Positions 12,312-63,604 of a stretch of 64,000 nucleotides of DNA are shown here, piece by piece. Position 1 is the first letter of the stretch; every line of letters begins with the position of its first letter. Below the pieces are notes generated by a model, which saw only the letters and a list, made by a program, of their open reading frames with translations, made no database searches and was not told the DNA's origin. Where the stretch lies: assembly GCF_000143415.4 (NCBI RefSeq), contig NW_003314299.1, forward strand, positions 1,490,559-1,554,558, written 5' to 3'. The DNA comes from Selaginella moellendorffii. Its lineage: Eukaryota > Plantae > Lycopodiophyta. The translations under genes were made by a program, and so were the position numbers.

Positions 12312-12474
12312 TGTGAGTGCTTGAAATATGGAAAGGGAATATAGAAAATGTACATATCAATTAGCCCAAAAACCCTAGTTTATATATAGGAGCAAGTGGT
12401 CTAAATTGAAACCAATCTAACAACTACCAAAATCTCACCATGCTAATATTAGTATACGGCATCGTAGCAGTACA
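12312..12474 (-). repeat. 5' LTR of gypsy copy 1 (outer end truncated)
   Basis: Homologous to 6894-7056. Similarity ends in AT-rich DNA. Confidence 0.8.
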
Positions 12475-13752: not shown

Positions 13753-13927
13753 TGTGAGGGCCAAATGCACGGCTACGATGCCGTATACTAATATTAGCGT
13801 AGTGGGATTTTGGTAGCTGTCGGATTGGTTTCAATTCGAACCATTCGCTCCTGTATATAAGCTAGGGTTTTTGGGCTAATTGATATGCACATTTCTGTAT
13901 TCCCTTTCCATATTTCATGCACTCACA
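13753..13927 (+). repeat. 5' LTR of gypsy copy 2 (175 bp)
   Basis: TGTGAG...CTCACA termini with an internal TATATAA and a TAGGGTTT telo-box. Confidence 0.85.
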
Positions 13928-18578: not shown

Positions 18579-18678
18579 NNNNNNNNNNNNNNNNNNNNNN
18601 NNNNNNNNNNNNNNNNNNNNNNNNNNNNNNNNNNNNNNNNNNNNNNNNNNNNNNNNNNNNNNNNNNNNNNNNNNNNNN

Positions 18679-37656: not shown

Positions 37657-39686
37657 ATGCGATGTTGTGGGTTTCCTTGTTTTGATAGAGCCAGGGCGGT
37701 GGTAGCGGTTTTTCTCGTTTTCTATTTGGTTTTGGGTGTGACTCTTGTTTTGGGCGATGACGATCGCGGCCGCCAGCGATCCCTGACAATCCAGCGCGTT
37801 CTAGAAAAGATCAACAAGCCAGGCGTCGCCAGCATCCAGGTCGGTAAGCATTTCCTTTTCTCCATTTTCCTTTCCTCCATTTGGGAAGTTCTCGACTAAA
37901 GAATCTTCTTCCTTGATGTTCTTCCTTAAATTATTCGTGGGTGAAGAGTCCTGATGGAGATATTATCGACTGCGTTCCCATCGCCAACCAGCCGGCATTC
38001 GATCATCCATTGCTGCAAGGCTCCAAGCTACAGGTTCTCATATAAATTCTCACTTCCTTAGAAATCTCCTCTAACCTTCATGCCTGCTTGTTTGATCGGT
38101 GGTAAACTTGGTTCCCACGTTTGCGTGTTTTCCTTCGAGCATTCGTAAAATTACGTGTTTCTTCTTGTTCTACCATTTTGCTCGAGGCATTGGTGTCACT
38201 GATCGAGCGAATTTTTTGCTATCAACTTTACAGATCTCGCCATCAAATTCCTCGTTTCTTCTGGCCTCCAAGAGTGGCAGAAAGATCCAGCAGCGATGGC
38301 ACCAAGCTGGCCAGCGTTGTCCCAAAGGCAGCATTCCAGTCCGCCGGACGCTCGAGCTGGACGTGGAGAGAATCGCTCAGCAGCGCGAAAATCACTCGAT
38401 CGATTCCTTTGCTCGAAAATCCCAGGGCCCTCCACACGTAGACAGCCACAAAAGCTTGCAAGCTGCGGTACCTTCTAGCTCCAGGCAACACGAGGTAAGT
38501 TTTTCTTTTTATTCTTCTTCATTGTTCCTCCAAGTTGATGCATTTGGATTCTTCTCTTCGATCCTTGTTTTCGTGCTGCTGTTTTCCTGTTCACTTTTGT
38601 CAGGTTTTATCTTCATTGCGGTACAGTTCATGTTCGCAACTTTGTCTCTGTGCAGCTTTCTTACACCTTTTCTTCTTTTTTTTTACTTTTTTCTTTTTTT
38701 TTTTGAGATTTAGCACGCAATTGCGTACGCGGAGGGTGTGTTTTACGGAGCCGAGGCCGTGATCAATGTATGGGATCCGTCAGTAGAAGGTGCAGATGAG
38801 TTCAGCCTCTCGCAAGTCTGGATTCTCTCCGGAACTTTCAATGTTGATCTCAACAGTGTTGAAGCAGGCTGGCAGGTATTCAAAACTATTTCTCAAAAAA
38901 AAAACAAAAAGACAAGAAAAAAGCAGAAACAACTCACAAGAATTTCCAGGTGAACCCCGCTCTCTACGGCGACAGGAATCCCCGATTCTTCACATACTGG
39001 ACAGTAAGAAGTTTTCTTGTTTTGTGTTCATCTTTCTCAGGCTTTTCCAAATATCTCAGAGTGATTCTTACCGTGGCACTGGCTGCTACAACCTTCTGTG
39101 CGAAGGCTTCGTGCAAATCAACGACCAAGTCGTGCTGGGCGGAGCAGTCGCACCCGTTTCATCACTTAACGGCGTCCAATACGACATCCGCATCCTCATC
39201 TTCAAGGTACACACAAAAACCTCCAAACTTTTCTCTTCAATCTTCTCAACATATCTCAAGCTCTAGAGAAAGAGATCTTCCATCGTCCCAAGAAACGTCT
39301 CACAAACTTTTTATTCACTTTCGCAGGACTTCATAACCGGCAATTGGTGGCTTCGCTATGGAGACGAGCTCATTGGCTACTGGCCTCCGCAGCTCTTCAC
39401 TCACTTGGCCGGCTTTGCAAACGTGATTGAGTGGGGCGGCGAAGTGGTGAACACGAGACCAAACAACAGGCACACGGCAACACAGATGGGAAGCGGTCAC
39501 TACCCGCAGGCAGGCTACGCGGTGGCCAGTTATCTCAAAAACCTTCGTGTGGTGGATCTCACCAGCTTGCTGCGCGGCCCGGCTAGCATTTTTACGCTGT
39601 CCACCAAGCCCGACTGCTACAGTATCCGATCCTCGGGTGGAACTTTCTTTTACGGGGGGCCTGGATTGAGTTCTTCCTGTCAATAA
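37657..39686 (+). CDS. Neprosin-family (DUF239) glutamic peptidase 2 with activation peptide, multi-exon
   Basis: Hydrophobic N-terminus, [61 protein letters not shown] and QMGSGHYP. Confidence 0.92.
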
Positions 39687-40189: not shown

Positions 40190-40869
40190 AACAACAAACT
40201 CCTGCAATCGCTCGCCCTCGAGAGGCCACCGCTGTCCGTGTTGCCGCACTACCATGCCATCTCGACTTGTACGCAGCACGCTCGCATCTGGCTTATTACG
40301 GCCACAACTTGAAGTTTTGTGCCTCTCCAGAGTTATATATGTTCAAGAGTTTTGTTGGACTAGATGGCCGGCTTGGGACGCAGGATTCTAGCACGCAAGA
40401 GGAGGAGGAGGTATGTACATGTTTCTGTGTGCAAGCTTTTATTCCTTTCTTTCTTGCCAGGTTCTAGCAAATGGTTTCTGCAAGTAGCGCACTCCGTCCT
40501 TCATGGAGAAAGCTGTGAGGGCCTGCACTATGGTAGACATGTGATACTAGCATCCATTCTTTAACACACATTAAAATCTTTGCATGATTTCTTTTTGTGA
40601 TGTTCTCCAGCCAAATGGAAAAGGCATGGTTGATGAACATGCGGCCAGAGGACTATGATCTCGCAAAGCCACCGGACATAGCGATGTGGCGCGCTTACAG
40701 ACAGTACGTTGGGCATCCCGTGGTGGTTCCGAAAGAGCAGCCCAAGATTGAAGGCCGCGTCCTTTCCACTATCAACTATAAATACACCCGCTACCTTCAC
40801 ACCGAGGCCTTCTCAAGGAAGGAGGAGGAGATTCCAATACCAGGACTTCTATGCTCGTTTCGTCATTAA
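40190..40869 (+). pseudogene. 5'-truncated copy (exons 4-7) of the unrecognised 7-exon gene
   Basis: Homologous to 43594-44250, with deletions and an altered C-terminus. Confidence 0.8.
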
Positions 40870-41414
40870 TGTAATATCAGCTAGTTCAATGGAGTGATTT
40901 CTCTCTCTGAGGCGATGCTTAGATGGTTGCCTGCGTAGTGCACGCATGCTTAGAACGGCAGAGCTTCGATGCGATGTAACCTGTTTGAGCTAAGATGGAG
41001 CCATTCAACTTAAATGCGAGTGAGAAGAGATACTACGATGGGCCATTATGTGGACACGACCAAGTTCGAGGCTCTGGTATGTGAGAAAATCTTTCTCCTG
41101 GCTTTGATTTCCTTTTTCCCTCCTTTCTTCCAGGACGCAGTGCAGAGGTAGACACTTTGAACGCCTCACGTGAAAAGTTAAAGAAGTTTCCGAGCACGAC
41201 ATTTCCCCTCGAGATATCGGGCTCATAAAGAAGCAGATTGCTGACGCGCTGGAGCCTGGAGATATGGTGCTTGTTTTTTATTGTACGGCATTGTCATGCT
41301 TGGTAGTAGTATTCTATTGTCTTGGGTATGCCACTCACGCTAGCAGTATTCCTTTTGTCTTTCACTGAATGCATGCATATGCTTGTGCCTAGCTTATACA
41401 TCTCTGTGGATCTT

Positions 41415-42370
41415 GACGAGATGAGCCACATTTCTACTGAGTAGTAGGAACATTCAGGTTAGCAGTGATTTTCAAAAGCGTAGTTTTGCTCCTTGTCCTC
41501 CGAGAAACTGACCTCTGGTTGTCGCAGTAGAAAGCTGGTCGACATGTCCCAGCCACCCGGTCAAATAAATCTAGTGACATGGGCAAAGACCGCTGCTCAA
41601 CAGCAAGGAGGGACTGGAGATCCTCGGCTCTATACAATGTTCCATTTGACAACCTCGTCAGGGTGGCAGCGATCACCTCCAGCCGGACGTCTCTCACAGG
41701 CCTCTCATGCAGTCGTCCAGGCGTTGAAGCTAATATACAACGACTCGGACGCCAGCGACGGTATCGTGTCCGGCAATGGCAGCATGCCCAGGGAAAGCCA
41801 GCAGCAGGACGTAAAGTCGAGGAATCCTTTTGTCGGCGGTGGTGGAGCGTACGCAAGCGGTGGTGGTGGTGGTGGTGGTGACGACGAGAGAATTCGCACT
41901 GCGGCGAGACACGGCTGGGAGAGTGACTCGTTCAACAGCATTGACTACGACTCTAGGACGTTTGGTGGAGATTACCAAGGACGCTTCGGCTTGATCGATG
42001 TCGCCGCAGTGGGAGATGACGCGCATTGCTGCTGCTCCCCCAGCTTGACAGTGCTACCGAGTGAGAAACACGCAGTGAGTGTTGGTGCTACTGCGGTACA
42101 AGCGGGACGATGCTAACAGGAACGACCATAGTGACATTTGGCTGCTATAGTTTTTAGAGGGAGCGGGGCGGCGATGGTGGTTGGCGGAGATAGAAGGGAT
42201 AGATTGATCATTGTTTCACACAGGCTAGTCGTATTCTTGCTCGAGATGATGGTTTCGAGCTCGGCTTCTCATCGATTTGGATTTTCTTGCTGGGTGTTTG
42301 CTACTGGAGTATAGCAAGATCACGGGAGCAAAAGAAGGCGAGCTTGAGTTCCTGGCTCGGGAAACAAGCT
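41415..42370 (+). pseudogene. ALE2-like kinase 3' fragment and 3' UTR (copy a)
   Basis: [17 protein letters not shown] and [17 protein letters not shown]. It retains the ALE2 intron and has frameshifts and deletions. Confidence 0.88.
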
Positions 42371-42435
42371 GTCTATGCCAGAGTATCGAAAAAACGGCTT
42401 AATAGTAAACGTAGGGCACAGTATTGCGCGCAGCA

Positions 42436-44317
42436 ATGCTTTCCAGTTCTTTTCGTAGAAGTCTCTCGACGCTAGGCAGTTTTTCTCCGCTGCCCTCGCT
42501 TGGTCGTTTGTCTCCGCTTCCGGGCAGTTTATCTGCGGATCTGAGGCGTACGCTTCATCTATCGCCCGTGTATCGTACCGAGATTTTGAAACCAGGGGTA
42601 GGATTTAATGATCTTGTCAACGCAAGGGGTATTGGCTATGCTGGGGCCATGTCCAAGTTCGTCGCCAAAGCTGCACGGCCGCATGAGGAGGAGGCAGCGG
42701 CGATGGACGTGCACGAATGCGTGTGCATAGATGCCATGATCGCCAAATGGCATGCTGAAGATCCAGACGAGACGCTGTTCCTGGTGCTGGCACTCTGCTA
42801 CATCGCCCGCCTCTCCGATGCCGAGAGGAGCGCGTGCGCTGCAACGCTGGGCTGGGACGGCGCGCGAGCGCGGATGGACTGCATGGTTGATTTCGCTCGC
42901 CGGGTGCTCCTCTCGCAGACTCCAATCCTTGACTCGTTAGAAGCATCGAGGCAAGAGGAGGAAGTGACCGGTCACCTGGAGCGTTTGTGGAGCGCGTTTT
43001 GCAGGGAGAGGAACATGAAAGGTTTGTAACTTTTCTTGGTTTTCTAATGACGGTTTTAGATCTTTGTTTTGGAAGTGTGCTCCAAGGAGGTGGTGCGCAC
43101 TGATATCGATATGGATTTCTTTCCTGCAGAGCCTTACCGCAAGCCTTGCAATGGGGAATTTAGATGTAAGAAGTTTTTTATTTACCTGGTTTCTCTTGTC
43201 GACAACTCTTTCAGGGCGCTGCAAAGGGGACGTGGAGGAGAAGTGGGACATCAAATTCTCCCCTCTGAGTACCACGTTTGCGGGGGAAGTGCCAAAGCTA
43301 CTGGACTTGGTATCCAAAGTTGTGAACAGCGACTTCTTCTTTTTTCACCCGGTGGACAACATGGTGAGTAACTCAAATTCTTGAAATCTCTGATCTTTAT
43401 AAGTTCTGTCCACAGGGGTGGAATATGCGATCGGTTGTGCGTGACCAAGCTCGACGAGACCAAGTAAAATTGGTTTACTCGCTGCTTGCAGGACATCGAG
43501 TCCCGCCGCCTTGGCCGTTTGTCGAAATGGACGGCGTCATGTCTGCACCCCTGCGGGTCAAGGAACTGGTACTGCTGCTCGAAGGGATTCACAACAACAA
43601 ACTCCTGCGATCGCTCGCCCTCGAGAGGCCACCGCTGTCCGTGTTGCCACACTACCATGCCATCTCGACTTGCACGCAGCACGCTCGTATCTGGCTTGGG
43701 CGCTACGACCTCCGAATCTATTACGACCACAAGTTGACGTGTAAGTTTTGTGCCTCTCCAGAGCTATATATGTTCCAAGTGTTTTGTTGGACTAGATGGC
43801 CGGCTTGGAACACAGGATTCTAGCACGCAAGAGGAGGAGGAAGTATGTACATGTTTGTGTTTGCAAGCTTTTATTCTTTTCTTTCTTGCCAGGTTCTAGC
43901 AAATGGTTTCTACAAGGAGCGCACTCCGTCCTTTATGGAGAAAGCTGTGAGGATGTGCACTATGGGAGAGATGTGGTACTAGCATCCATTCTCTAACACA
44001 CATTAAAATATCGGCATGATTTGTTTTTGTGATACAGGGTGTCCTCCAACGAAAAGGAAGAGGCATTGCTGATGAACATGCGGCCAGAGGACTACGATCT
44101 CGCAAAGCCACCGGACACAGCGATGTGGCGTGCTTATAGACAATACGTTGGGCATCCCGTGGTGGTTCCAAAAGAGCAGCCCAAGATTGGAGCAGCCCAA
44201 GTCCTTTCGGATATCAACTATGAATACACCCGGTACCTTGGCTGGGAGACAAAGTCGAAACACAGCGAAGATGGTCTCTTTCCACTACCCGTACCAACTC
44301 TCCATGAAATCTTATAA
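42436..44317 (+). CDS. Uncharacterised 519-aa protein with a mitochondrial-presequence-like N-terminus (7 exons), intact copy 1
   Basis: Exons 42436-43021, 43076-43165, 43215-43363, 43416-43740, 43796-43842, 43893-43975 and 44038-44317. All introns are GT-AG and phase-compatible, giving 1560 nt with no internal stop. Confidence 0.72.
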
Positions 44318-45124
44318 ATTCTGTATGAAGAGTAAAGAATATATCTAGAATATCCCGGCATATTCTAAAGTATTTTTTAAGCCTGTTAAACTAATCAATT
44401 CCGGATAATATTGTTTATCTGTAATACAATTTTTTTGAGGCGCACTTGCTGCATCCTCATGCATATCCTGGAATTCGTTCAATACAAGCTTGGCGTGCGA
44501 GCAAGCGAGTTAGGGGAGGTTTCCAGGGTACAGGGCAACACTCGTGAGATTTTGTTCCTTCCAAAGTTCCTTACACATGACAGTTTGTGTGCTTAAATCA
44601 GTGGAAACCACGAGTCAGGAGGCGTTGTTTCATCAACCATGTTCAAATTCCCGTGCAAAATAGAAATCTGGTTTGTAGTTCTAAAATGGAGAAAAACTGA
44701 CATATAAATTTGTTATTTTTTCTTCTTTGCAAGGTGTTAAATTGACTATGGTCTCTTATGCTTCTGTATTGCCGACAACTGGTTGGTCATGGGATCCACG
44801 CTTTACTGGTTCTATGCCAGGTACCTGCATGTCCATAGAATTTGTAGCGTGTGAGAGCTAGCTAGGTTGCTTGTTTTTAGTTTTCCAGCGTTACAACAAC
44901 TCGGCAGTGCGGCATGCTCAACTTGACGACTTGCCCGTCCTTACTGTGCAGATTGCTGACGCGCTGGAGCCTGGAGAAATGGTGCTTGTTTTTAATTGTT
45001 CGGCATTGTCATGCTTGGTAGTAGCATTCTATTGTCTTGGGTATGCCACTCATGCAAGCAGTATTCCTTTTGTCTTTCACTGAATGCATTGCTTGTGCCT
45101 AGCATATACATCTCTGTGGATCTT

Positions 45125-46150
45125 GACGAGATGAGCCACATTTCTACTGAGTAATAGGAACATTCAGCTAAGCAGTGATTTTCAAAAGCGTAGTTTTGCT
45201 CCTTGTCCTCCGAGAAACTGGGCTCTGGTTGTCGCAGTTACATAGCTCCAGAGTACGCAATGACCGGACATCTTTTGGTGAAGAGCGATGTCTACCTCTA
45301 CGGGGTCGTGCTACTGGGGCTACTGTCGGGCAGAAAGCCGGTCGACATGTCCCAGCCACCCTGTCAAATAAATCTAGCAACATGGGCAAAGACCGCTGCT
45401 CAACAGCAAGGAGACTGGAGATCCTCGGCTCTAAATAATGTTCCATTCGACAACCTCGTCAGGATCACCTCCAGCCGGACGTCTCTCACAGGCCTCTCAT
45501 GCAGTTGTCCAGGCGTTGAAGCTAATGTACAACGACTCGGACGCCAGCGACGGTATCGTGTCCAGCAATGGCAGCATGCCCAGGGAAAGCCAGCAGCAGG
45601 ACGTAAAGTCGAGGAATCCTTTTGTCGGCGGTGGTGGTGATGGCGGTGGTGACGACGAGAGAATCCGCACTGTGGCGAGACACGGCTGGCAGAGTGGCTC
45701 GTTCAACAGCATTGACTACGACTCTAGGACGTTTGGTGGAGATCGGGCAGGGAGGCAGAACGCACTGTCAAGCTGGGGGAGCAGCAGCAATGCGCGTCAG
45801 CTCCCACTGCGGCGACATCGATCAAGCCGAAGCGTCCTTGGTACCGAGCGAGAAACGCGTAATGGGACAGTGAGTGAGTAGGCGCTACTGCAGTACAAGC
45901 GGGAAGATGCTAACAGGAACGACCATAGTGACAGTTTTTAGAGGGAGCGGGGCGGCGGGGTGGTGGTGGCGGAGATGGAAGGGATGGATTGATCATTGTT
46001 TCACGCAGGCTAGTCGGATTCTTGCTCGAGATGATGGTTTCGGCTTCTCATTGATTTGGATCTTCTTGCTGGGTGTTTGCTACTGGAGTATAGCGAGATC
46101 ACAGGAGCAAAAGAAGGCGACCTTGAGTTCCTGGCTCGGGAAACAAGCTG
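45125..46150 (+). pseudogene. ALE2-like kinase 3' fragment and 3' UTR (copy b, in the palindrome spacer)
   Basis: [41 protein letters not shown], followed by frameshifts. Confidence 0.88.
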
Positions 46151-46966
46151 TCCAGAGTGCAGGATGGTGATAGTTTGTAGCATATGATATCGTTGATGAC
46201 AGAGCCATTTGTGGCGAGAGCTCGGGCTACACCTCGAGGCGTTTTCCTGGTCTGGCACAGTAAGGACGGGCAAGTCGTCAAGTTGAGCATGCCGCGCTGC
46301 CGAGTTGTTGTAACGCTGGAAAACTAAATACCAGAAACAAGCAACCTAGCTAGCTCTCACACGCTACAAATTCTATGGACATGCAGGTACCTGGCATAGA
46401 ACCAATAAAGCATGGATCCCATGACCAACCAGTTGTCAGCAATATAGAAGCATAAGAGACCATAACAATTTAACACCTTGCAAAGAAGAAAAAATAACAA
46501 ATTTATATGTTAGCTTTTTCTCCACTTTAGAACTACAAACCAGATTTCTATTTTGCACAGGCATTTGAACATGGTTGATGAAACAACGCCTCCTAACTCG
46601 TGGTTTCCACTGATTTGAGCACACAAACTGTCATGTGTAAGGAACTTTGGAAGGAACAAAATTCTCACGAGGATCCAGATCGCCACACGTGCCCTGGGAA
46701 GCGAATCGAGAAGGAGCTAGCAGGCGCTGAGGGCGCCGCCTGGTCGTGTCGCCTTGTACCCTGGAAACCTCCCCTAACTCGCTTGCTCGCATGCCAAGCT
46801 TGTATCGAACGAATTCCAAGATATGCATGGAGATGCAGCAAGTGCGCAGGAAGCTCTGTGAATGGATGCCTCAAGAAAATTGTATTACATATTATCCGGA
46901 AAAAATACTTTAGAATATGCCGGGATATTCTAGATATATTCTTTACTCTTCATACAGCTTTCTAAT

Positions 46967-48856
46967 TTATAAGATTTCATGGAGAGTTGGTACGGGTAGT
47001 GGAAAAAGACCATCTTCGCTGTGTTTCGACTTTGTCTCCCAGCCAAGGTACCGGGTGTATTCATAGTTGATATCCGAAAGGACTTGGGCTGCTCCAATCT
47101 TGGGCTGCTCTTTTGGAACCACCACGGGATGCCCAACGTATTGTCTATAAGCACGCCACATCGCTGTGTCCGGTGGCTTTGCGAGATCGTAGTCCTCTGG
47201 CCGCATGTTCATCAGCAATGCCTCTTCCTTTTCGTTGGAGGACACCCTGTATCACAAAAACAAATCATGTCGATATTTTAATGTGTGTTAGAGAATGGAT
47301 GCTAGTACCACATCTCTCCCATAGTGCATATCCTCACAGCTTTCTCCATAAAGGACGGAGTGCGCTCCTTGCAGAAACCATTTGATAGAACCTGGCAAGA
47401 AAGAAAAGAATAAAAGCTTGCACACACAAACATGTACATACCTCCTCCTCCTCTTGCGTGCTAGAATCCTGCGTCCCAAGCCGGCCATCTAGTCCAACAA
47501 AACACTTGAACATATATAACTCTGGAGAGGCACAAAACTTACACGTCAATTTGTGGTCGTAATAGATTCGGAGGTCGTAGCGCCCAAGCCAGATGCGAGC
47601 GTGCTGCGTGCAAGTCGAGATGGCATGGTAGTGTGGCAACACGGACAGCGGTGGCCTCTCAAGGGCGAGCGATCGCAGGAGCTTGTTGTTGTGGATCCCT
47701 TCGAGCAGCAGTACCAGTTCCTTGACCCGCAGGGGTGCAGACATGACGCCGTCCATTTCGACAAACGGCCAAGGCGGCGGGACTCGATGTCCTGCAAGCA
47801 GCGAGTAAACCAATTTTACTTGGTCTCGTCGAGCTTGGTCACGCACAACCGATCGCATATTCCACCCCTGTGGACAGAACTTATAAAGATCAGAGATTTC
47901 AAGAATTTGAGTTACTCACCATGTTGTCCACCGGGTGAAAAAAGAAGAAGTCGCTGTTCACAACTTTGGATACCAAGTCCAGTAGCTTTGGCACTTCCCC
48001 CGCAAACGTGGTACTCAGAGGGGAGAATTTGATGTCCCACTTCTCCTCCACGTCCCCTTTGCAGCGCCCTGAAAGAGTTGTCGCAAGAGAAACCAGGTAA
48101 ATAAAAAGACTTCTTACATCTAAATTCCCCATTGCAAGGCTTGCGGTAAGGCTCTGCAGGAAAGAAATCCATATCGATATCGGTGCGCGCCACCTCCTTG
48201 GAGCACACTTCCAAAACAAAGATCCAAAACCGCCATCAGAAAACCAAGAAAAGTTACAAACCTTTCATGTTCCTCTCCCTGCAAAACGCGCTCCACAAAC
48301 GCTCCAGGTGCTCCGTCACCTCCTCGTCTTGCCTCGATGCTTCTAACGAGTCAAGGGTTGGAGTCCGCGAGAGCAGCACCCGGCGAGCGAAATCAACCAT
48401 GCAGTCCATCTGCGCTCGCGCGCCGTCCCAGCCCAGCGTTGCAGCGCACGCGCTCCTCTCGGCATCGGAGAGGCGGGCGATGTAGCAGAGTGCCAGCACC
48501 AGGAACAGCGTCTCGTCCGGATCTTCAGCATCCCATTTGGCGATCATGGCATCTATGCACACGCATTCGTGCACGTCCATCGCCGCTGCCTCCTCCTCAT
48601 GCGGCCGTGCAGCTTTGGCGACGAACTTGGACATGGCCCCAGCATAACCAATACCCCTTGCGTTGACAAGATCATTAAACCCTACCCCTGGTTTCAAAAT
48701 CTCGGTACGATACACGGGCGATAGATGAAGCGTACGCCTCAGATCCGCATATAAACTGCCCGGAAGCGGAGACAAACGAACCCGCGAGGGCAGCGGAGAA
48801 AAACTGCCAAGCGTCGAGAGACTTCTACGAAAAGAACTGGAAAACCTGGAAAGCAT
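46967..48856 (-). CDS. Uncharacterised ~522-aa protein, intact inverted copy 2 of the 7-exon gene
   Basis: Same exon structure as 42436-44317 and an identical last-exon protein. The N-terminus is MLSRFSSSFRRSLSTLG. The frame-shifting indels I saw lie in introns. Confidence 0.72.
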
Positions 48857-48899
48857 TGCGGCCCAATACTGTGCAATACGTTTACTATTAAGCCGTTTA

Positions 48900-49875
48900 T
48901 TCGATACTCTGGCATATGTTACAAACTACCACCATCTTGCACTCTGGACAGCTTGTTTCCCGAGCCAGGAACTCAAGCTCGCCTTCTTTTGCTCCAGTAG
49001 CAAACACCCATCAAGAAGATCCAAATCGATGAGAAGCCGAGCTCGAAACCATCATCTCGAGCAAGAATACGACTCCATCCCTTCCATCTCCGCCACCACC
49101 ACCCCCGCCGCCCCGCTCCCTCTAAAAACTGTCACTATGGTCGTTCCTGTTAGCATCGTCCGTACCGCAGTAGCGCCGACTCACTCACTGTCCCATTACG
49201 CGTTTCTCACTCGGTACCAAGGAAGCTTCGGCTTCCCCGCCCGATCTCCACCAAACGTCCTAGAGTCGTAGTCAATGCTGTTGAACGAGCCACTCTCCCA
49301 GCCGTGTCTCGCCACAGTGCGGATTCTCTCGTCGTCACCACCGCCACCACCACCACCGCTTGCGTACGTTCCACCCGACTTTACGTCCTGCTGCTGGCTT
49401 TCCCTGGGCATGCTGCCATTGCCGGACACGATACCGTCGCTGGCGTCCGAGCCGTTGTACATTAGCTTCAACGCCTGGACGACTGCATGAGAGGCCTGTG
49501 AGAGACGTCCGGCTGGAGGTGATCGCTGCCACCCTGACGAGGTTGTCAAATGGAACATTGTATAGAGCCGAGGACTCCTTGCTGTTGAGCAGCGGTCTTT
49601 GCCCATGTCACTAGATTTATTTGACCGGGTGGCTGGGACATGTCGACCGACTTCTGCCCGACAGTAGCCCCAGTAGCACGACCCCGTAGCGGTAGACATC
49701 GCTCTTCACCAAAAGATGTCCGGTCATTGCGTACTCTGGAGCTATGTAACTGCGACAACCAGAGCCCAGTTTCCCGGAGGACAAGGAGCAAAACTACACT
49801 TTTGAAAATCACTGCTTACCTGAATGTTCCTATTATGTTCCTATTACTCAGTAGAAATGTGGTTCATCTCGTCAA
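48900..49875 (-). pseudogene. ALE2-like kinase 3' fragment and 3' UTR (copy c)
   Basis: Mirror image of copy a, with the same frameshifts. Confidence 0.87.
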
Positions 49876-50419
49876 GATCCAGAGAGATGTTTATGCCAGG
49901 CACAAGCATATGCATGCATTCAGTGAAAGACAAAAGGAATACTGCTCGCGTAAGTGGCATACCCAAGACAATAGAATGCTACTACCAAGCACGAACAATA
50001 AAAAACAAGCACCATATCTCCAGGCTCCAGCGCATCAGCAATCCGCTTCTTTGTGAGCCTGATATCTCGAGGGGAAATGTTGTGCTCGGAAACTTCTTTA
50101 TCTTTTCTCGTGAGGCGTTCAAAGTGTCTACCTCCGCACTGTCAAGCCATGCGTCCTGGAAGAAAGGAGGGAAAAGGGAAATCAAAGCCAGGAGAAAGAC
50201 TTTCTCACATACCAGAGCCTCGAACTTGGTCGTGTCCACATAATGGCCCATCGTAGTATTTCTTCTCTTTCGCATTTAAGTTGAATGGCTCCATCTTAGC
50301 TCAAACAGGTAACAAGGAAAGGATCGCTAACCATTTGTGCACTACGCAGGCAACGACGCCATCTAAGCATCGCCTCAGAGAGAGAAATCACTCCATTGAA
50401 CTAGTTGATATTACATTAA

Positions 50420-52100
50420 TGATGTCGCAGAAACGAGCTGGTACTGGAATCTCCTCTCTTTTGAGCTCCTTCCTTGCGAGCCTCGGTGTGGGGACCATCT
50501 TCGCTGTGTTTCAACTTTGTTGTACTGGGTGTATTTATAGTTGATAGTGGAAAGAACGCGGCCTTCAATCTTGGGCTGCTCTTTTGGAACCACCACAGGA
50601 AGCACGCCACATTGCTGTGTCTGGTGGCTTTGCGAGATCGTAGTCCTCTGGCCGCATGTTCATGAGCCATGCCTTTTCCATTTGGCTGGGGAACACCCTG
50701 CATCACAAAAAGAAAACCATGCCCAGATTTGGTAGAGAATGGATGCTCGTACCACATGTCTACCATAGTGCAGACCCTCACAGCTTTCTCCATGAAGGAC
50801 GGAGTGCGCTCCTTGCAGAAACCATTTGATAGAACCTGGCAAGAAAGAAAAGAATAAAAGCTTGCACACACAAACATGTACATACCTCCTCCTCCTCTTG
50901 CGTGCTATAATCCTGTGTCCCAAGCCGGCCATCTAGTCCAACAAAACACTTGGAACATATATAACTCTGGAGAGGCACAAAACTTACACGTCAACTTGTG
51001 GTCGTAATAGATTCGGAGGTCGTAGCGCCCAAGCCAGATGCGAGCGTTCTGCGTGCAAGCCGAGATAGATCCACAACAACAAGCTCCTGCGATCGCTCCT
51101 CCTCGAGAGACCACCGCTGTCCGTGTTGCCGCACTACCATGCCAGCAGTACCAGTTCCTTGACCCGCAGGGGTGCAGACATGACGCCGTCCATTTCGACA
51201 AACGGGCAAGGCGACCGTACTCGATGTCCTGCAAGCTGCGAGTAAACCAGTTTTACTTGGTCTCGTCGAGCTTGGTCACGCACAACCGAACCCTTGTGGA
51301 AAGAACTTATAAAGGTCAGGGATTTCAAGAATTTGAGTTCATGTTGTCCACGGGGAAGAAGTCGCAGTTTACAACCAGTCCAGTAGCTTTGGTACTTCCC
51401 CCATAAACGTGATATTCGAAGGGGAGAATTTGATGTTCCACTTCTCTTCCCCCTGAAAGTGTCGTCAACAAGAGAAACCAGGAAAAAAAAAGACTTCTTA
51501 CATCTGAATTCCCCATTGCAAGGAGGCTCGGCAGAGAAGAGATCCGTGTCGATAGTGGCACGCTCCACCCCCTTGGAGCTCACTTCCAGAACAATATCGT
51601 AAGGAAACGAAACTTTGGTCTGGATACAAACCTTTGATGTTCCTGTCCTTGCAAAACTTGCTCCACAGGCGCTCCAGATGCTCCTCATGCGTCTAGCGTG
51701 GCAAGGCTTGGAAGTCCAGTCGGTGAGAGAAGCACCCGGTGAGCGAAATCAATCATGCAGTCCATTTGCGATCGCGCGCCATCCCAACCCAGCGTCGCAG
51801 CACACCCGCTCCTCTTGGCATCGGAGAGGCGGGCGATGTAGCAGGGTGCCAGGACCAGGAACAGCGTCTCGTCCCATTTGGCGATCATGGCATCTATACA
51901 TGCGCATTCGTGCACGTCCATCGCCGCTGCCTCCTCCTCATGCGGCCGTGCAGCTCTGGCGACGAACTTGGACATGGCCTCAGCATAACCAATATCGCTA
52001 ATATCATCAAACCCTACCCCTGGTTTCAAGATCTCGGCGATAGATTAAGAAAACTACCTAGCGTCTACGAAAAGAACTGGAAAACCTGGAAAGCATTGCC
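50420..52100 (-). pseudogene. Degenerate near-full-length copy of the 7-exon gene
   Basis: MSKFVARAARPHEEEAAAMDVHECACIDAMIAKW and further homology, with deletions, frameshifts and an internal micro-inversion. Confidence 0.82.
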
Positions 52101-52287
52101 CTACGTCCCTTCTTTGGCAAACATATATGTTACAGAACGATCATGGCATCACTCTCGAGAGCTTTCCCGAGCCAGGAACTCAAGCTCGCCTTCTTTTGCT
52201 TCCTGTGACCTCGGTAGTAAACACTTGCAGCAAGAAACTCCAAGTCGATGAGAAGGCGAGCTCGAAACTACTATCACCACCATCTCC

Positions 52288-52437
52288 ATCCATCACGACC
52301 ACCGGATCGCCATCGCCAGCGCCCAGGTAGCCGATCACCTGGAGGACGTGGGGGTGTGGCGCGACAAGCGCCGCCACCTCCCTCTCAAACGTAACGTCGC
52401 TGCGCTTGAAGACTTTGACGGCCACCGCCTGTCCCAG
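52288..52437 (-). pseudogene. Isolated fragment of a different protein kinase (subdomains II-V)
   Basis: GQAVAVKVFKRSDVTFEREVAALVAPHPHVLQVIGY, flanked by the 11-bp direct repeat ccaccatctcc. Confidence 0.65.
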
Positions 52438-53159
52438 CCACCATCTCCGGTAAGAATCCGACTAGCTTATGTAAATCAATGATTAATCTTCCATCTCCGC
52501 CACCACCACCACCAGCCCGCTCCCATAGAAGAGATAAAAGTAAACTTACGTCAGTAAAGCGTAGTAAGTTGCACTTTGATTCTTCAAGGACAAAACCAGT
52601 TTCAGTAATTTCCAAACATTTATTATAAGGTTTCGAGTATCTGTACAAAACTCTTAACGTTTAATCCAGACTTCTCTTTAGCTGTTGTAACATATAACCT
52701 TTGTGCCAGCCTGAATTAGTTGCGGAATCCGAAATGTCTAGGTATGGACAGTTTCCACAAGGATACGCAAGCACCACACGAAGGAAGAAAAAAGCAAAGC
52801 TTGTCATACCCCGTCAGCCATAGTAATTCTTGGGATTTGCTACAATATCATGTCCAGACAACGGGACATTACTCGTCTTGGTGTCTCACAATTGAAGAAT
52901 TCTTACTCACAGGGCACATTACTTCCAAATCGCTGGAAGAACAGAAGCCCCATCTCCCATTGCCTCGATGCTGTCGTTACCTCAGTATGCTCTCATCTTC
53001 ATGCAAAATCCACCAGAGCGAAAGAGGAAGAATGAATACTTCCACCTCCAGGGAAGCTTACACGGAGCTCACAAGTGCTGGTACTGGAACGTCGAGTGCT
53101 GGTACTGGAATCGTAATAGCGATTGAATCCCACCACGTCTTTCACTTCGTCAAACGGAG

Positions 53160-54597
53160 GATCGTCCACTTTTAATACACCCGGTTCTTGGCCAAGGAGA
53201 CAGAGTCGAAGCACAGCAGAGATCATCTCTTTCCACTGGCAATCCAGAAATTCTCAAGGGAGGACCTCATAAGAGAGGACATAGTTGATAGTGCAAAGGA
53301 CGAGGCCTCGAATCTTTCGCTGCTCTCTAAGAACCACCACGGGTTGCCCAAGGTACTTTTTATAAGCACGCCACATCGCCGTGTCCGGTGGCTTTGCGAG
53401 ATCGTAGTCCTCTGGCCGCATGTTCATCACCCATGCCTCTTCCTTTTCGTTGGGGTACACCATCACAACAACCAATGCCAGGATTCAAATCTGTGTGTTG
53501 AAGAATGGAAGCTATTACCACATTGCTTCAACAGCGCAGTCCCTCACAGCTTTCTCCATGAAGGACGGAGTGCGCTCCTTGCAGAAACCATTTGCTAGAA
53601 CCTGACAAGAAGAAAAGGATCAAAGTTTGTACACACGAACAAGTATATACCTCCTCCTCCTCCTGCGTGCTAGAGTCCTGTGTCCCAAGCCGGTCATCTG
53701 CTCCAAGAAAACTCTTGAGAAAGAGAACACATATAACTCTGGACAGGCACCACTTACACGTCAAATCGTGGTCGTAAGAGATTCGGAGGTCGTAGCGTCC
53801 AAGCCAGATGCGAGCGTGCTGCGTGCAAGCCGAGATGACATGGTAGTGCGGCAATACAGCCAGCGGCGGCCTTTCAAGAGCAAGCGATCGCAGGAGCTTG
53901 TTGTTGTGGATCCCTTCAAGCAGCAACATTAATTCCTTGATACGCAAAGGGGCAGAGTCGGCGGCGTCCACTGGAACATACGAGTCAGGCATGGATGTCC
54001 CGCAAGCTGCGAGTAAGCCAGTTTACTTGGTCTTCTCGAGCGTGGTCCCATCGACCAATCAACGAGATTTTAATGTTATCAGCTACAAGCTCTATCATTC
54101 TATCATTCGCATGCTGGGAACTCAAGGTTGGTTACTCACCAGATTGTCCACTGGGAGAGAACCAAAGAAGTCGCATATCACAACTTTGGATGCCAAGTCC
54201 AGTAGCTTTGGCACTTCCCCAATAAACGTGGTACTCAAAGGGGAGATTTTGATGCTCCACTGCTTCCTCTCTTCCTCTATGCAACGCCCTGCAGCTGTTG
54301 TCAACAAGAGAATAAAAAAGACTTCTTACATCTAAATTCCCCATTGGAAGGCTTCCGGTAAGGCTCCGCCGGCAAGAGATCCGTCCCAATAACGTTGTGC
54401 GCCACCTCTTTGGAACTCCGAGAAAACTTTGGCCTCAATACAAACCTTTGATGTTCCTGTCCTCGCAAAACTCGCTCCACAAACGCTCCAGGTGCTCCGT
54501 CACCTCCTTGTCTTGCTTCCATGCGTATAGCGGGGCAAGGCTTGTAAGTCCAGTCCGCGAGAGCAGCACCCGGCGAGCGAAATCAACCATGCAGTAA
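53160..54597 (-). pseudogene. More diverged, 5'-truncated copy of the 7-exon gene directly downstream of intact ALE2
   Basis: APLRIKELMLLLEGIHNNKLLRSLALERPP and MNMRPEDYDLAKPPDTAMWRAYKKY. Homology stops at 54597 in an AT-rich segment. Confidence 0.8.
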
Positions 54598-55014: not shown

Positions 55015-57983
55015 CTATAGCAGCCAAATGTCACTATGGTCGTTCCTGTTAGCATCGCCCCGCTTGTACCGCAGTAGCGCCGACTCACTCACTGTCCCAT
55101 TGTCCGCGTTTCTCACTCGGTACCATGGACGCTTCGGTTTGATCGATGTCGCCGCAGTGGGAGCTGACGCGCATTGCTGCTGCTGGCTCGCGAAAGTCCC
55201 CACGATGAAACTCTCCGAGTTTGACAGTGCCTGCTGCCTCCCTGCCCGATCTCCACCAAACGTCCCGGAGTCGTAGTCTATGCTGATGAACGAGTCACTC
55301 TCTCGGCAGTGCCTCGCCGCACCGCTGATTCTCTCGTCGTCACCACCACCACCGTTTGCGTACGTTCCACCACCGCCGACGAAAGGATTCCTCGACTTCA
55401 CATCCTGCTGCTGGCTTTCCCTGTGCATGCTGCCATTGCCGGACATGATACCGTCGCTGGCGTCCGAGTCGTTGTACACCAGCTTCAATGCCTGGACAAC
55501 TTCTCCCATGAGAGGCCTGTGAGAGACGTCCGGCTGGACGCACATCGAGGCGATCGCTGCCACCTTGACCAGGTTGTCGAATGGAACGTTGTTCAGAGCC
55601 GGGTCGACGAGGATCTCCAGTCCCTCCTTGCTGTTGAGCAGCGGCCTTGCCCATGTCACTAGATTTTCTTGACCGGGTGGCTGGGACATGTCGACCGGCT
55701 TTCTGCCCGACAGTAGCTCGAGTAGCACAACCCCGTAGCTGTAGACATCGCTCTTCACCAAAAGATGTCCGGTCATTGCGTACTCTGGAGCGACGTAACT
55801 GCGCCAGTAAACCAGAGATCAGTTTCTCAGAGGATAAAAGAAAACTACGCTGTTGAAAACCAAAGCGTACCCGAATGTTCCCATCACTCGGGTAGAAATG
55901 TGGGTGCTCATCTCGTCAGAGGCCGCTTTTGCGAGCCCAAAATCCGACACTTTGGGAGTGAAATCCTCTTCTAGCAGTATGTTGCTGGCTTTGAAGTCTC
56001 TATGTATCACTCTGGGATTTGAATCCTCGTGAAGGTAAGCCAGACCGCGTGCTGCACCGAGAGCTATCTTCAAACGGGTTTCCCAATCCAAAGGCGAAGT
56101 TTCTTGATCAATGCCTGCAGTCATAGATAAATGCTAACAACGATGAAGTAGCTTGCACGTACCATGAAGGTGGGATTCAACACTTCCATTTGAAATGAGC
56201 TCGAAAACCAAGCATCGTGTGTGTTCTTCGATGCAAATGCCCAAAAGCTTCACCAGATTACGATGGTGAAGGCGGCTCAGCATTTCCACCTCCGCTGCAA
56301 ACTCACGGCCGCCCTGGTGATCATCTCTAGTCAAAACTTTGACAGCAACTCTTGTGTTGTCGTCCAGAATGCCATGATAAACTCGACCGAAACCTCCCTC
56401 TCCAATAATATTCTGCGTCTTGAACCCGTTGGTTGCCCGTTCTATCTCCAGTAGAGTAAATGTCTTTGCCGAGCCGGTATAAGGCGTGAAGCTCGACGCA
56501 TAAGAGATTGATGTCGAGCTGGCCATGCTGCTAGAGAGCATGGATCCTCCACCTGAAACAAACGAACTTTGTCAGTAAAAGATGCTTAGTAAACGAGCAG
56601 AATACCTGACTTCTTCGTCACAGACGAGCCAGGCAGCATGGGTTCAACCATCATAGGTTGCTTGGCATGTTTGCAGCGCCATGCAAACCACACCGCTACC
56701 AGGCATATAACGGCAAGCAGAGCAGTCAACACCACAACGGCTATGGTTCCAGTGCCGGGCCTTGACCTCCTCTTCTTTACATTGACACTGAGTGGTTGTT
56801 CGTAAGGACTTTTAGAGCTTGTAGGGCCTCCCGCATTGCTACCGGGCGAAGGAGGGGACGGAGGCAAGCCTGATCATGAGACCAACTTAACATAAAGCAT
56901 AAAGCAACATTTCAAAAAGAGATTTTACCTGGATATCGAACATAAAGGACGCTGTAGCTTCCAAACCGGTCCTCACTAATGCCAACCTCGTGATTCCAAA
57001 ACTTATGAGCTGTTCGCAAAGCAGTCGCATTGTCAAAGGCAGCTCCCAAAGGAACTAATTCTGCTTTAACTTCTGTTTCGTCCATGTTATTTTCCACTGT
57101 GTTCGCACCCAGAATTCGCACCTGGCTTTGCGAAAACGACGTCCCTGCCGCCAATTCTGAAGCCAACTCTGACACTTGCGGGAAAAACACATAAGGCGGC
57201 ACTCCAAGCTGAAGGCTCACCAGCATTGGAATAACACAGCCGCATGGTTCACCAGCAGTTGAAGTGAATGGATCTGTGCATCGTTCGTGACAGTCTGTGA
57301 CAAAAAGAAAACGTATTTTGATCGCCCTGAGGACATCTAAAAGAGCGTGTTACCCGTGGACGGTGCTGGCAACGAAGGAATAATACCAGGTGGAGGCATT
57401 GGAGAAACGGACGGGCCTGGGCCTAGAAGAAAGAACAAACAAAAAAAGAGTGCTGAAGCTTGAAAATGGAGGTGATCGTTGTTACCTGGAGTTGGCGCCT
57501 GGATGTGGACATGACGCCGATGGTGTGGCGATTGTGCTGGAACCACTCCCCCGTGACCTCGATGTGTTGGTGCGGGAGCGTGATCGTGACGATGATGGCG
57601 ATGGTGATGGTGCCCAGTGGTTGGAGCCGAGGCAATGCTTACTTGGTAGGATGGAGAGTGCTGCCCAGAAAGGAGAAACCGCCGGAAGTGAGTCTTCTCG
57701 GTTTGATCAGTAGCGCTGCGCAAACCCATATCACCAAAATGCTCTCAAGAGAAGATCGAGAAGTAGAAAACCAACTTACCGTCTTCCCAAGCCCTCGATT
57801 TCGCTCTCCCCAATTAGAACTCCTGGCACCAAACAACCCACCACATAAATTCCTACTCGTTTAAACAACGCACCAGAAGAAAAGAAAAACCAAAGAGAGA
57901 AAACACGAGAACTTACCTTGAGAAGCGGCAATGTAGAGAGCGCTCAAGCTCAGCACCACTAGCACGGCATTCCCACAACTCAT
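55015..57983 (-). CDS. ALE2: ALE2-like (Pro/His-rich ectodomain) receptor-like Ser/Thr kinase, multi-exon
   Basis: Signal peptide [23 protein letters not shown], a His/Pro-rich region, a Cys motif ([19 protein letters not shown]) and a TM helix ([22 protein letters not shown]). Kinase motifs [32 protein letters not shown] and [22 protein letters not shown]. Confidence 0.92.
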
Positions 57984-63354: not shown

Positions 63355-63533
63355 NNNNNNNNNNNNNNNNNNNNNNNNNNNNNNNNNNNNNNNNNNNNNN
63401 NNNNNNNNNNNNNNNNNNNNNNNNNNNNNNNNNNNNNNNNNNNNNNNNNNNNNNTTTAGCGCGGTCATTCGAGTTTATATTACGTATAATTTTAATTATA
63501 TCGCTGTTTTAACAAGATTAACCAAAAATAAAA

Positions 63534-63604
63534 TGCACTGCCCGGGAATCGAACCCGGGTCTGTACCGTGGCAGGGTACTATTCTACCACTAGACCAGCA
63601 GTGC
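63534..63604 (-). tRNA. trnG-GCC: tRNA-Gly(GCC)
   Basis: GCACTGCTGGTCTAGTGGTAGAATAGTACCCTGCCACGGTACAGACCCGGGTTCGATTCCCGGGCAGTGCA (71 nt) forms a full cloverleaf and is followed by a T-run terminator. Confidence 0.95.

What the first reader, a model, noticed from the sequence alone, without database searches (positions are those of the whole stretch)
40190..51144. ~11-kb palindrome carrying ALE2 kinase fragments about 4 kb from the intact ALE2 gene: candidate hairpin-siRNA locus
Seen: two ~4.8-kb arms in inverted orientation surround a 1.3-kb spacer. Each arm contains the ALE2 3' coding end and 3' UTR plus the orphan gene, and the two intact orphan genes point toward the centre. Established: inverted gene duplications produce fold-back RNA that Dicer-like enzymes process, and they are a proposed source of new MIRNA genes targeting the parent gene. 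Inference: read-through from either orphan gene would form a multi-kb hairpin whose small RNAs match the orphan mRNAs and, if the ALE2 fragments are included, the ALE2 mRNA. The palindrome could also homogenise its arms by gene conversion.
Basis: partly seen in the sequence, partly recalled or inferred. Interest (0 to 1): 0.75.

Follow-up and report, generated by a model that had tools for sequence, protein, structure and literature searches.

The report
Young palindrome of duplicated spikemoss genes
Next to a receptor-kinase gene of the spikemoss Selaginella moellendorffii, a block of DNA was recently copied several times, once in reverse, which left an 11-kb mirror-image structure holding two working copies of a spikemoss-only gene and dead scraps of the kinase gene; it could fold into a silencing hairpin if read through, but nothing found here shows that it does.

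Summary
The palindrome is real in this assembly. The arms are 40190-44952 and 46251-51144, around a 1,298-bp spacer. They differ by 3.5% in substitutions and by many indels.

It is a nest of tandem and inverted copies of one unit, the dead 3' end of the ALE2-like kinase gene followed by its downstream neighbour "O".

The two inner O genes are intact, convergent, 7-exon genes of 519 and 522 aa. They are under purifying selection: dN/dS is 0.26 and every 1-bp indel is intronic. A 487-bp tract without substitutions suggests arm-to-arm gene conversion.

O belongs to a family of about ten proteins found only in S. moellendorffii, with no known domain.

The hairpin-siRNA idea fits the geometry but could not be tested, because no RNA, small-RNA or methylation data were reachable. 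Indirect signs argue against strong silencing. Both genes stay conserved, AT-rich terminator-like blocks follow both stop codons, and the arms lack the transition bias seen in the window's retrotransposon pair. The ALE2 fragments are also badly placed for pairing, and only 10-13% of their 21-mers match ALE2.

Verdict: an ordinary young duplication scar with a testable silencing hypothesis.

The parts
40190..44952 (+). Left arm of the palindrome: O tail, module X, dead ALE2 3' fragment, intact O_L gene and its 3' flank
   Evidence: Inverted homology to 51144-46251. Homology to every other copy starts exactly at 40190.
40190..40797 (+). O_t: partial O copy (middle of exon 4 to exon 7), a pseudogene fragment
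   Evidence: 87% identical to O reference positions 1261-1906; alignment.
40825..41414 (+). X_L: 590-bp module of unknown origin, present only in the arms and partly in the spacer
   Evidence: Matches only 50456-49830, and 44948-45124 for its last ~180 bp.
41414..42370 (+). K_L: dead ALE2 3' fragment, with an 82-bp in-situ micro-inversion at 41973-42054
   Evidence: 85-88% identical to 55918-54771. It shares 3-, 8-, 10- and 4-bp deletions with K_C and K_R. The inversion is exact.
42436..44317 (+). O_L: intact 7-exon gene, 519 aa. Exons: 42436-43021, 43076-43165, 43215-43363, 43416-43740, 43796-43842, 43893-43975, 44038-44317
   Evidence: GT-AG introns of 49-62 nt. The exon junctions are those of RefSeq XP_024536178.1 and of JGI model 418592. 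dN/dS 0.26 against O_R.
44953..46250 (+). Spacer: partial X (44948-45124), a third dead ALE2 3' fragment K_C (45124-46159), a 38-bp stub of the O 5' flank (46149-46186) and 64 unique bp
46251..51144 (-). Right arm of the palindrome
46967..48856 (-). O_R: intact 7-exon gene, 522 aa. Exons: 48856-48262, 48207-48118, 48068-47920, 47867-47543, 47488-47442, 47391-47309, 47246-46967
   Evidence: JGI model SELMODRAFT_418593 (P0015) has the same junctions, read from an internal Met.
47694..48182 (-). Tract with no substitution between O_R and O_L; candidate gene-conversion tract
   Evidence: Largest gap between differences is 487 bp, P=4e-5 under uniform placement.
48940..49830 (-). K_R: dead ALE2 3' fragment
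49830..50456 (-). X_R: partner of X_L
50522..52099 (-). O2: decayed O copy with deletions, a premature stop and a 77-bp in-situ inversion at 51068-51144. Only its 3' part belongs to the right arm.
   Evidence: 81% identical to O with 139 gap positions; alignment; inversion.
52148..52524 (-). Remnant of another ALE2 3' flank copy (K tail)
   Evidence: 79-82% identical to ALE2 reference positions 2795-3032.
53280..54595 (-). O1: 5'-truncated, decayed O copy directly downstream of the real ALE2 gene, the presumed original position
   Evidence: 80-87% identical to O reference positions 546-1889. It lacks the start codon region.
55015..57729 (-). Intact ALE2-like receptor kinase gene, the parent of the K fragments
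   Evidence: Pfam ALE2_N E=4.3e-37 at 56915-57226. Kinase exons at 56137-56541, 55822-56124 and 55018-55776.

Best explanation
This is a young, complex segmental duplication in Selaginella moellendorffii, not a dedicated RNA-silencing device. The ancestral arrangement, on the minus strand, was the ALE2-like kinase gene followed closely by a lineage-specific gene, O. A unit made of the last ~1.1 kb of ALE2 plus O was copied. The ALE2 piece lies directly upstream of O and probably carries O's promoter. It died at once as a kinase fragment. The unit was then amplified in tandem, and about 5 kb of the array was copied in reverse, probably by a replication-based template-switching event. That produced the 11-kb palindrome. 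The original O next to ALE2 (O1) and a second copy (O2) decayed. The two copies in the inner arms remained functional protein-coding genes, transcribed towards each other, and they sometimes exchange sequence by gene conversion. Shown here: the anatomy, the single origin of the kinase fragments, the intact O genes and their purifying selection, and the uneven spread of differences. Inferred: the order of events, the template-switch mechanism, the promoter role of the ALE2 fragment, and normal termination of the O transcripts before they reach the opposite arm.
For: The module map shows that K-then-O adjacency in every copy mirrors the native ALE2-then-O1 order. K_L, K_C and K_R share four derived deletions relative to ALE2, so they have one pseudogene ancestor. 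K0 differs from the K copies by 9% and O1 from O_R by 13%, against 3.5% between the arms, which gives two phases of duplication. The O_L and O_R models are 7 exons with GT-AG introns of 49-62 nt, and their junctions match RefSeq XP_024536178.1 on the syntenic scaffold. There are 17 synonymous and 15 nonsynonymous differences, dN/dS 0.26, binomial P=2e-4 (5e-3 with a generous synonymous share). All three 1-bp indels fall in introns (P=0.005), and the only exonic indel is 9 bp and in frame. A 487-bp tract has no substitution, P=4e-5. Exact micro-inversions of 82 and 77 bp are present, and the breakpoint of the second lies within 7 bp of the position that bounds the left arm. This is typical of replication-based complex rearrangement and hard to produce by misassembly. 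Three distinct near-identical O sequences exist in the diploid assembly: O_L, O_R and XP_024536178.1, the last on the 1,968,525-bp scaffold that also carries the 96% allele of the neighbouring PPR gene. At least one haplotype must therefore hold two copies.
Against: No transcript, small-RNA or methylation data were available, so silencing activity is not excluded. The O_L/O_R dS of 0.049 is about the reported inter-haplotype Ks of ~0.056 (PMC7801247), so a mis-join of haplotypes cannot be ruled out from one assembly. RefSeq annotates the PPR neighbour on this scaffold, but no RefSeq protein for O_L or O_R turned up; this is unexplained. The dN/dS value rests on only 32 substitutions and averages over both lineages, so one copy could have lost function recently.
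Confidence: 0.7

Rival explanations
1. Functional endogenous hairpin (endoIR) locus. Read-through from O_L or O_R gives a fold-back RNA of about 2.6 kb. DCL enzymes dice it into siRNAs that act on the O mRNAs and, through the kinase fragments, on ALE2.
For: The geometry allows it. The genes are convergent, 97.6% identical over the gene, and 57% of 21-mers are perfectly paired. The fragments hold 100-138 21-mers identical to ALE2. S. moellendorffii is reported to have DCL1, DCL3 and DCL4 (PMC5569507). Precedents exist: at the PAI1-PAI4 tail-to-tail repeat a minority read-through transcript is the dsRNA source (PMC3203196), and IR71-type endoIRs are known (PMC10827316).
Against: Both O genes are kept by purifying selection. 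The stops are 2.65 kb apart, and each is followed by an AT-rich terminator-like block. Arm substitutions lack the transition bias of the methylated-looking gypsy pair (ts:tv 1.7 against 8.2, P=2e-11). K_C lies in the loop of the O hairpin, and K_L/K_R pairing needs an 8.4-kb transcript. No Rfam miRNA family matches the window. No DCL2 and no 24-nt peak are reported for this species. No paper mentions these genes.
Confidence: 0.15
2. Assembly artefact. The two arms are the two haplotypes, or two tandem copies, joined head to head by the assembler.
For: Arm divergence (dS 0.049; 97.6% identity in the gene) equals the reported haplotype divergence (98.5%, Ks ~0.056). The assembly holds both haplotypes. 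Only one O gene is annotated on the syntenic scaffold.
Against: The region from 18.7 to 63.3 kb has no gap. The centre is asymmetric, with a 1.3-kb spacer that is itself a further diverged copy. The arms differ by private deletions and an 82-bp inversion. A third distinct O sequence sits on the other scaffold and is about equally distant from both arms, with private amino-acid changes of 8, 3 and 7.
Confidence: 0.07
3. The palindrome is kept by selection as a gene-preserving or dosage structure. Arm-to-arm gene conversion keeps two copies of O intact, as on sex-chromosome palindromes.
For: A 487-bp tract has no substitution and exon 7 has one difference in 280 bp. Both palindromic copies are intact, while the two non-palindromic copies (O1, O2) are dead.
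Against: The arms are only 95-98% identical, far from the near-identity of conversion-maintained palindromes. One tract is weak evidence. Intactness may simply reflect youth plus ordinary purifying selection.
Confidence: 0.08

Closest known systems
Arabidopsis PAI1-PAI4 tail-to-tail inverted repeat (Ws strain)
   Same: Two near-identical protein-coding genes lie tail to tail. There, dsRNA arises from a minority of transcripts that read through the centre into the palindromic partner (PMC3203196).
   Different: PAI1-PAI4 has almost no spacer and is driven by a foreign upstream promoter, and its methylation and small RNAs are demonstrated. Here the stops are 2.65 kb apart, each gene has its own upstream region, both genes are under purifying selection, and no RNA or methylation data exist.
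Endogenous inverted-repeat siRNA loci (endoIR, e.g. Arabidopsis IR71)
   Same: A multi-kb inverted repeat that would form a stem of about 3 kb if transcribed as one RNA (PMC10827316).
   Different: endoIRs are listed as non-coding and are defined by their siRNAs. Here the stems are two intact coding genes, and no siRNAs are known.
Inverted-duplication model for the birth of MIRNA genes (Allen et al. 2004, as cited in PMC10827316 and PMC3237417)
   Same: Pieces of a gene (the ALE2 3' end) lie in inverted orientation near the parent gene and keep exact 21-46-nt matches to it.
   Different: The inverted ALE2 pieces are 2.8-6.6 kb apart, with a whole gene between them, so they are not a compact foldback. 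No small RNA is known.
Complex duplication with inverted segments from replication template switching (FoSTeS/MMBIR-type, DUP-TRP/INV-DUP in human genomics; from my own knowledge)
   Same: A mix of direct and inverted copies, a triplicated segment (K in +, +, - order), micro-inversions at or near breakpoints, and small deletions at junctions.
   Different: The mechanism is inferred from the product only. The junctions are several percent diverged, so microhomology can no longer be read reliably.
Sex-chromosome palindromes with arm-to-arm gene conversion (human Y; from my own knowledge)
   Same: Paired genes in inverted arms, with signs of sequence exchange.
   Different: The arms here are 95-98% identical, not above 99.9%. 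The locus is autosomal-type and small, and conversion is at most occasional.

Membership tests
Endogenous inverted-repeat (hairpin) siRNA locus | Long, highly complementary inverted repeat in the DNA | tested here: met
   Inner arms are 2.6 kb and 94.5-95.3% identical. 1,453 of 2,559 21-mers are perfectly paired.
Endogenous inverted-repeat (hairpin) siRNA locus | One transcript spans both arms | not testable with these tools
The JGI model 418592 that runs from O_L into the spacer is a chimeric prediction, not evidence of a transcript.
Endogenous inverted-repeat (hairpin) siRNA locus | 21-24-nt siRNAs from both strands of the arms | not testable with these tools
   No small-RNA data. No paper mentions the gene identifiers.
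Endogenous inverted-repeat (hairpin) siRNA locus | The repeat is non-coding (class definition in PMC10827316, Table 1) | tested here: not met
   Both inner arms are intact genes with dN/dS 0.26.
Proto-MIRNA by inverted duplication of the target gene | Inverted copies of part of the target gene | tested here: met
   K_L and K_C on the + strand against K_R on the - strand. All derive from ALE2 55918-54771.
Proto-MIRNA by inverted duplication of the target gene | The copies are adjacent and form a compact foldback | tested here: not met
   K_C and K_R are 2.8 kb apart, with the whole O_R gene between them. K_L and K_R are 6.6 kb apart.
Proto-MIRNA by inverted duplication of the target gene | Small RNAs complementary to the parent mRNA | tested here: inconclusive
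   The potential exists, with 100-138 identical 21-mers per fragment and exact blocks of up to 46 nt. Production is unknown.
Young segmental duplication (tandem plus inverted) of a gene neighbourhood | The copies keep the parental order and orientation of neighbouring segments | tested here: met
   K is followed by O in every unit, as ALE2 is followed by O1.
Young segmental duplication (tandem plus inverted) of a gene neighbourhood | Shared derived changes show that the copies descend from one another | tested here: met
   Four deletions are shared by K_L, K_C and K_R.
ALE2-family receptor-like kinase (parent gene) | ALE2_N extracellular domain plus a protein kinase domain | tested here: met
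   PF23180 E=4.3e-37. The kinase matches three exons, E=1e-13 to 2e-19 for the first two and 2e-5 for the last. Orthology to Arabidopsis ALE2 itself was not tested.
Conversion-maintained palindrome | Arm identity far above that of the surrounding duplicates, and shared variants | tested here: inconclusive
   One 487-bp identical tract (P=4e-5) and mosaic signal among the K copies, but overall arm divergence is 3.5%.

The most novel reading that the evidence does not exclude
The palindrome is a hairpin locus caught at birth in a lycophyte. A fraction of O transcripts read through the centre. The fold-back RNA, together with pairing between the spacer and right-arm ALE2 fragments, yields siRNAs that tune both O paralogues and the epidermal-patterning kinase ALE2. 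This would be the first step of the inverted-duplication route to a MIRNA gene, outside seed plants.
Probability: 0.06. Interest if true: 0.7.

Novelty: new member of a known kind. Interest (0 to 1): 0.3.

Why it matters
If the structure is real in the plant, it is a clean and datable example (dS about 0.05) of how a compact genome builds tail-to-tail gene pairs and strews pseudogene fragments of a developmental kinase around them. It offers a simple test of whether such structures trigger RNA silencing in a lycophyte that lacks DCL2 and a 24-nt siRNA peak. It also shows that two published JGI gene models (SELMODRAFT_418592 and 418594) are chimeras of pseudogene pieces, and that the 'orphan' belongs to a small gene family restricted to Selaginella and of unknown function. 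As it stands, it is an ordinary duplication scar. Earlier notes of this scan report similar inverted duplications elsewhere in the same genome.

Tried and rejected
1. The look-up of encoding contigs was tried, to fetch the second haplotype and transcript contigs.

2. The word search with O exon 1 found nothing in the allowed length range. The ESM Atlas gave only sub-threshold PIP5K look-alikes at 0.86, which I rejected as chance.

3. Pfam found no family for the O exons or for six family members.

4. An AlphaFold2 model from the 11-sequence family alignment had mean pLDDT 37.5. It was too poor to use, so no fold search was run.

5. Rfam found no miRNA or other RNA family in the arms, only a tRNA at 63534-63604.

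6. A full-text search for the gene and protein identifiers found no paper. Banks et al. 2011 is not held.

7. CpG observed/expected is 0.83-0.87 in the arms and spacer, the same as in neighbouring genes, so it is uninformative at this age. The excess of transitions at CpG sites is 2-4 fold in every comparison, including the retrotransposon pair, so it does not discriminate.

8. TE capture (Pack-MULE or Helitron) was considered for the ALE2 fragments and rejected, because the fragments keep their native adjacency to O.

9. The joined spliced O protein was not typed or sent to any tool. Exons were searched by reference, and the database proteins P0010 and P0015, which equal the spliced products, were used instead. 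dN/dS was computed on whole codons within exons only.


Full report
**Organism and setting**

All relatives of the arm-borne gene, and the nearest relative of the neighbouring PPR gene, are Selaginella moellendorffii proteins. Three JGI models match the window: SELMODRAFT_418592, 418593 and 418594, all on a 1,751,465-bp scaffold. The window is therefore a piece of that scaffold.

The published assembly holds both haplotypes, about 98.5% identical, Ks ~0.056 (PMC7801247).

The gene order in the window is:
- a neprosin-like gene on the + strand at about 38.1-39.3 kb;
- the repeat complex at 40.19-54.6 kb;
- an ALE2-like receptor kinase on the - strand at 57729-55015, with ALE2_N at E=4e-37 and kinase exons;
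- an intronless PPR gene at 63233-60537.

**Observation**

The repeat finder and self-BLAST confirm the palindrome.
- The left arm is 40190-44952, the right arm is 46251-51144, and the spacer is 1,298 bp.
- The inner 2.6 kb is 94.5-95.3% identical with gaps. It contains gapless blocks of 1,336 bp at 97% and 545 bp at 98%.
- The outer 2.2 kb scores 87-91%, but mainly because of indels.
- Substitutions alone are 146 of 4,209 aligned sites, or 3.5%.
- No assembly gap lies between 18.7 and 63.3 kb.

**Anatomy**

I mapped the ALE2 gene and the best O copy against the whole window. The region is built from three modules:
- K, which is ALE2 55918-54771: the last ~100 nt of the penultimate exon, the intron, the last exon and 245 bp of 3' flank;
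- O, which is about 2.7 kb: a gene and its flanks;
- X, which is 590 bp of unknown origin.

Reading the minus strand downstream from ALE2, the order is: K0 (the real gene) - O1 (54595-53280) - K tail (52524-52148) - O2 (52099-50522) - X_R - K_R (49830-48940) - O_R (48950-46251).

Reading the plus strand from 40190, the order is: O_t (O positions 1261-1906) - X_L - K_L (41414-42370) - O_L (42374-44952) - partial X (44948-45124) - K_C (45124-46159) - a 38-bp stub of the O 5' flank - 64 unique bp. The right arm follows.

The 'spacer' is therefore itself a third, plus-strand ALE2 fragment. The arms are slices of a tandem array.

**The kinase fragments are dead**

In a four-way alignment, K_L, K_C and K_R share deletions of 3, 8, 10 and 4 bp relative to ALE2, and each also has private deletions. 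They descend from a single pseudogene.

They differ from ALE2 by about 9% in substitutions. Among themselves they differ by 1-5% in well-aligned windows, with mosaic phylogenetic signal.

K_L carries an exact 82-bp in-situ inversion at 41973-42054.

**The O genes are alive**

The five-copy alignment gives a 7-exon model with GT-AG introns of 49-62 nt. It encodes 522 aa in O_R (48856-46967, -) and 519 aa in O_L (42436-44317, +).

The same exon junctions appear in RefSeq XP_024536178.1 (519 aa, on another scaffold) and in the JGI models.

Evidence for purifying selection:
- O_L and O_R differ by 17 synonymous and 15 nonsynonymous changes, giving dS 0.049, dN 0.013 and dN/dS 0.26. The chance of that many synonymous changes under neutrality is 2e-4, or 5e-3 if 30% of changes are allowed to be synonymous.
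- All three 1-bp indels within the gene fall in introns, P=0.005.
- The only exonic indel is 9 bp and in frame.

Both copies, or at least their average, have therefore been under purifying selection.

O2 has deletions, a premature stop and a 77-bp inversion inside exon 4. O1, the copy in the presumed original position next to ALE2, lacks the start region. Both are pseudogenes.

**What O is**

- Exon 1 had no hit in the word search or in Pfam.
- The exhaustive HMMER search found eight representatives.
- A profile search found nine clusters.
- All are S. moellendorffii proteins without Pfam domains.
- The AlphaFold model was unusable, with pLDDT 37.5.

O is therefore one member of a small family restricted to Selaginella, of unknown function. 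It is not a singleton orphan.

**Second haplotype**

The PPR neighbour has a 96% identical RefSeq protein (XP_024536179.1) on a 1,968,525-bp scaffold. The next accession, XP_024536178.1, is the O gene on that same scaffold. I take that scaffold to be the syntenic partner.

Its O protein is about equally distant from O_L and O_R. Private amino-acid changes number 8, 7 and 3 over 421 compared positions.

Three distinct sequences in a diploid mean that at least one haplotype carries two copies. The duplication is therefore real, but the inverted orientation still rests on this one assembly.

**History (inferred)**

- The first K-O duplication is older: K0 differs from the K copies by 9% and O1 from O_R by 13%.
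- The amplification and inversion are younger, at 3.5% between the arms.
- dS 0.049 corresponds to about 3.5-4 My at the rate borrowed in PMC7801247. This is roughly as old as the haplotype divergence.
- The left arm ends exactly at O position 1261 (window 40190), against unrelated DNA. In the right array, O continues beyond that point. The left arm is therefore the derived, inverted copy.
- The breakpoint of the 77-bp inversion in O2 (O position 1254) lies within 7 bp of that boundary.
- Together with the +,+,- triplication of K and the 82-bp inversion, this points to a replication-based, multi-step template-switching event. That is an inference from the product only.
- K ends only about 90 bp before the O start codon, so the ALE2 fragment probably travels with O because it contains O's upstream control region. 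This too is an inference.

**Gene conversion**

The 45 differences within the gene are unevenly spread. A 487-bp stretch (48182-47694) covering two introns has none, P=4e-5. Exon 7 has one difference in 280 bp.

**The hairpin-siRNA hypothesis**

Points in favour:
- The geometry fits, and 57% of O_L 21-mers are perfectly matched in O_R.
- DCL1, DCL3 and DCL4 are reported for this species (PMC5569507).
- PAI1-PAI4 and IR71 are well-studied precedents.

Points against, all indirect:
- Both O genes are conserved.
- Their stops are 2,649 bp apart, and each is followed by a 100-120-nt block of 24-32% GC, as expected of a plant polyadenylation region.
- Arm-to-arm substitutions have ts:tv 92:54. The two oppositely oriented Ty3/gypsy copies at 8.4-18.4 kb, the kind of DNA expected to be methylated, have 368:45, Fisher P=2e-11.
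- The species is reported to lack DCL2 and a 24-nt peak.
- No Rfam miRNA family matches the window.

For ALE2 the case is weaker:
- In a read-through O hairpin, K_C lies in the loop.
- K_C could pair only with K_R, which lies beyond O_R. K_L/K_R pairing needs an 8.4-kb transcript.
- Only 10-13% of fragment 21-mers match ALE2.

No RNA, small-RNA or methylation data were reachable, so the hypothesis is neither shown nor refuted. I put about 15% on meaningful siRNA production and about 6% on regulation of ALE2.

**Earlier notes of this scan**

Another first-stage note (s1-420297) described the same 7-exon gene in two intact convergent copies plus decayed ones; my model agrees with it. Notes on other windows of this genome (s1-424074, s1-358671, s1-368752) describe similar inverted duplications that follow-up agents judged to be duplication scars. 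I did not test those, and they are not counted as evidence here.

**Verdict**

This is a new example of a known kind of structure, of modest interest, and it is cleanly testable with public read data.

Noticed in passing
window 8367-18444: A second large inverted repeat (arms 8367-12474 and 18444-13766, 83-85% identical, around a 1.3-kb AT-rich centre). It is two decayed Ty3/gypsy retrotransposon copies in opposite orientation, with gag, RT, RNase H and integrase hits. Their differences are strongly biased to transitions (368:45). An N run at 18579-18678 abuts it.
   Followed up: partly
window 41973-42054, 51068-51144, 53165-53237: Three short in-situ inversions of about 73-82 bp lie inside duplicated modules (K_L, O2 and the 3' end of O1). 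The first two were checked and are exact. The O2 inversion breakpoint lies within 7 bp of the O position at which the left arm of the palindrome begins. This coincidence is unexplained; it may be a scar of template switching.
   Followed up: partly
window ~41000-46170 (+) and ~54590-49000 (-): The JGI models SELMODRAFT_418592 (1,139 aa) and SELMODRAFT_418594 (954 aa, named 'protein kinase domain-containing') are chimeras. They string together dead ALE2 fragments, O copies and intervening DNA, and they should not be read as real proteins.
   Followed up: yes
window 42436-44317 and 46967-48856: RefSeq annotates the PPR neighbour on this scaffold (XP_024539434.1). No RefSeq protein for O_L or O_R was found among the family's clusters. 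Only the copy on the syntenic scaffold has one (XP_024536178.1). The reason is unknown.
   Followed up: partly
window 38099-39263 (+): A neprosin-family gene (Neprosin_AP and Neprosin domains) lies just left of the palindrome. The duplicated block starts about 0.9 kb after the last matched exon.
   Followed up: no
window 60537-63233 (-) and 63534-63604 (-): An intronless 898-aa PPR open reading frame; RefSeq models it as 1,001 aa. Its counterpart on the other scaffold is only 96% identical in protein. A tRNA gene lies next to an N run at 63355-63454.
   Followed up: partly
other scaffolds (P0006, P0007, P0016): Some O-family members are annotated as fusions with a THH1/TOM1/TOM3-type membrane domain or a USP-type domain, and several cluster on one 1.9-Mb scaffold. 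These may be further chimeric models or real fusions.
   Followed up: no
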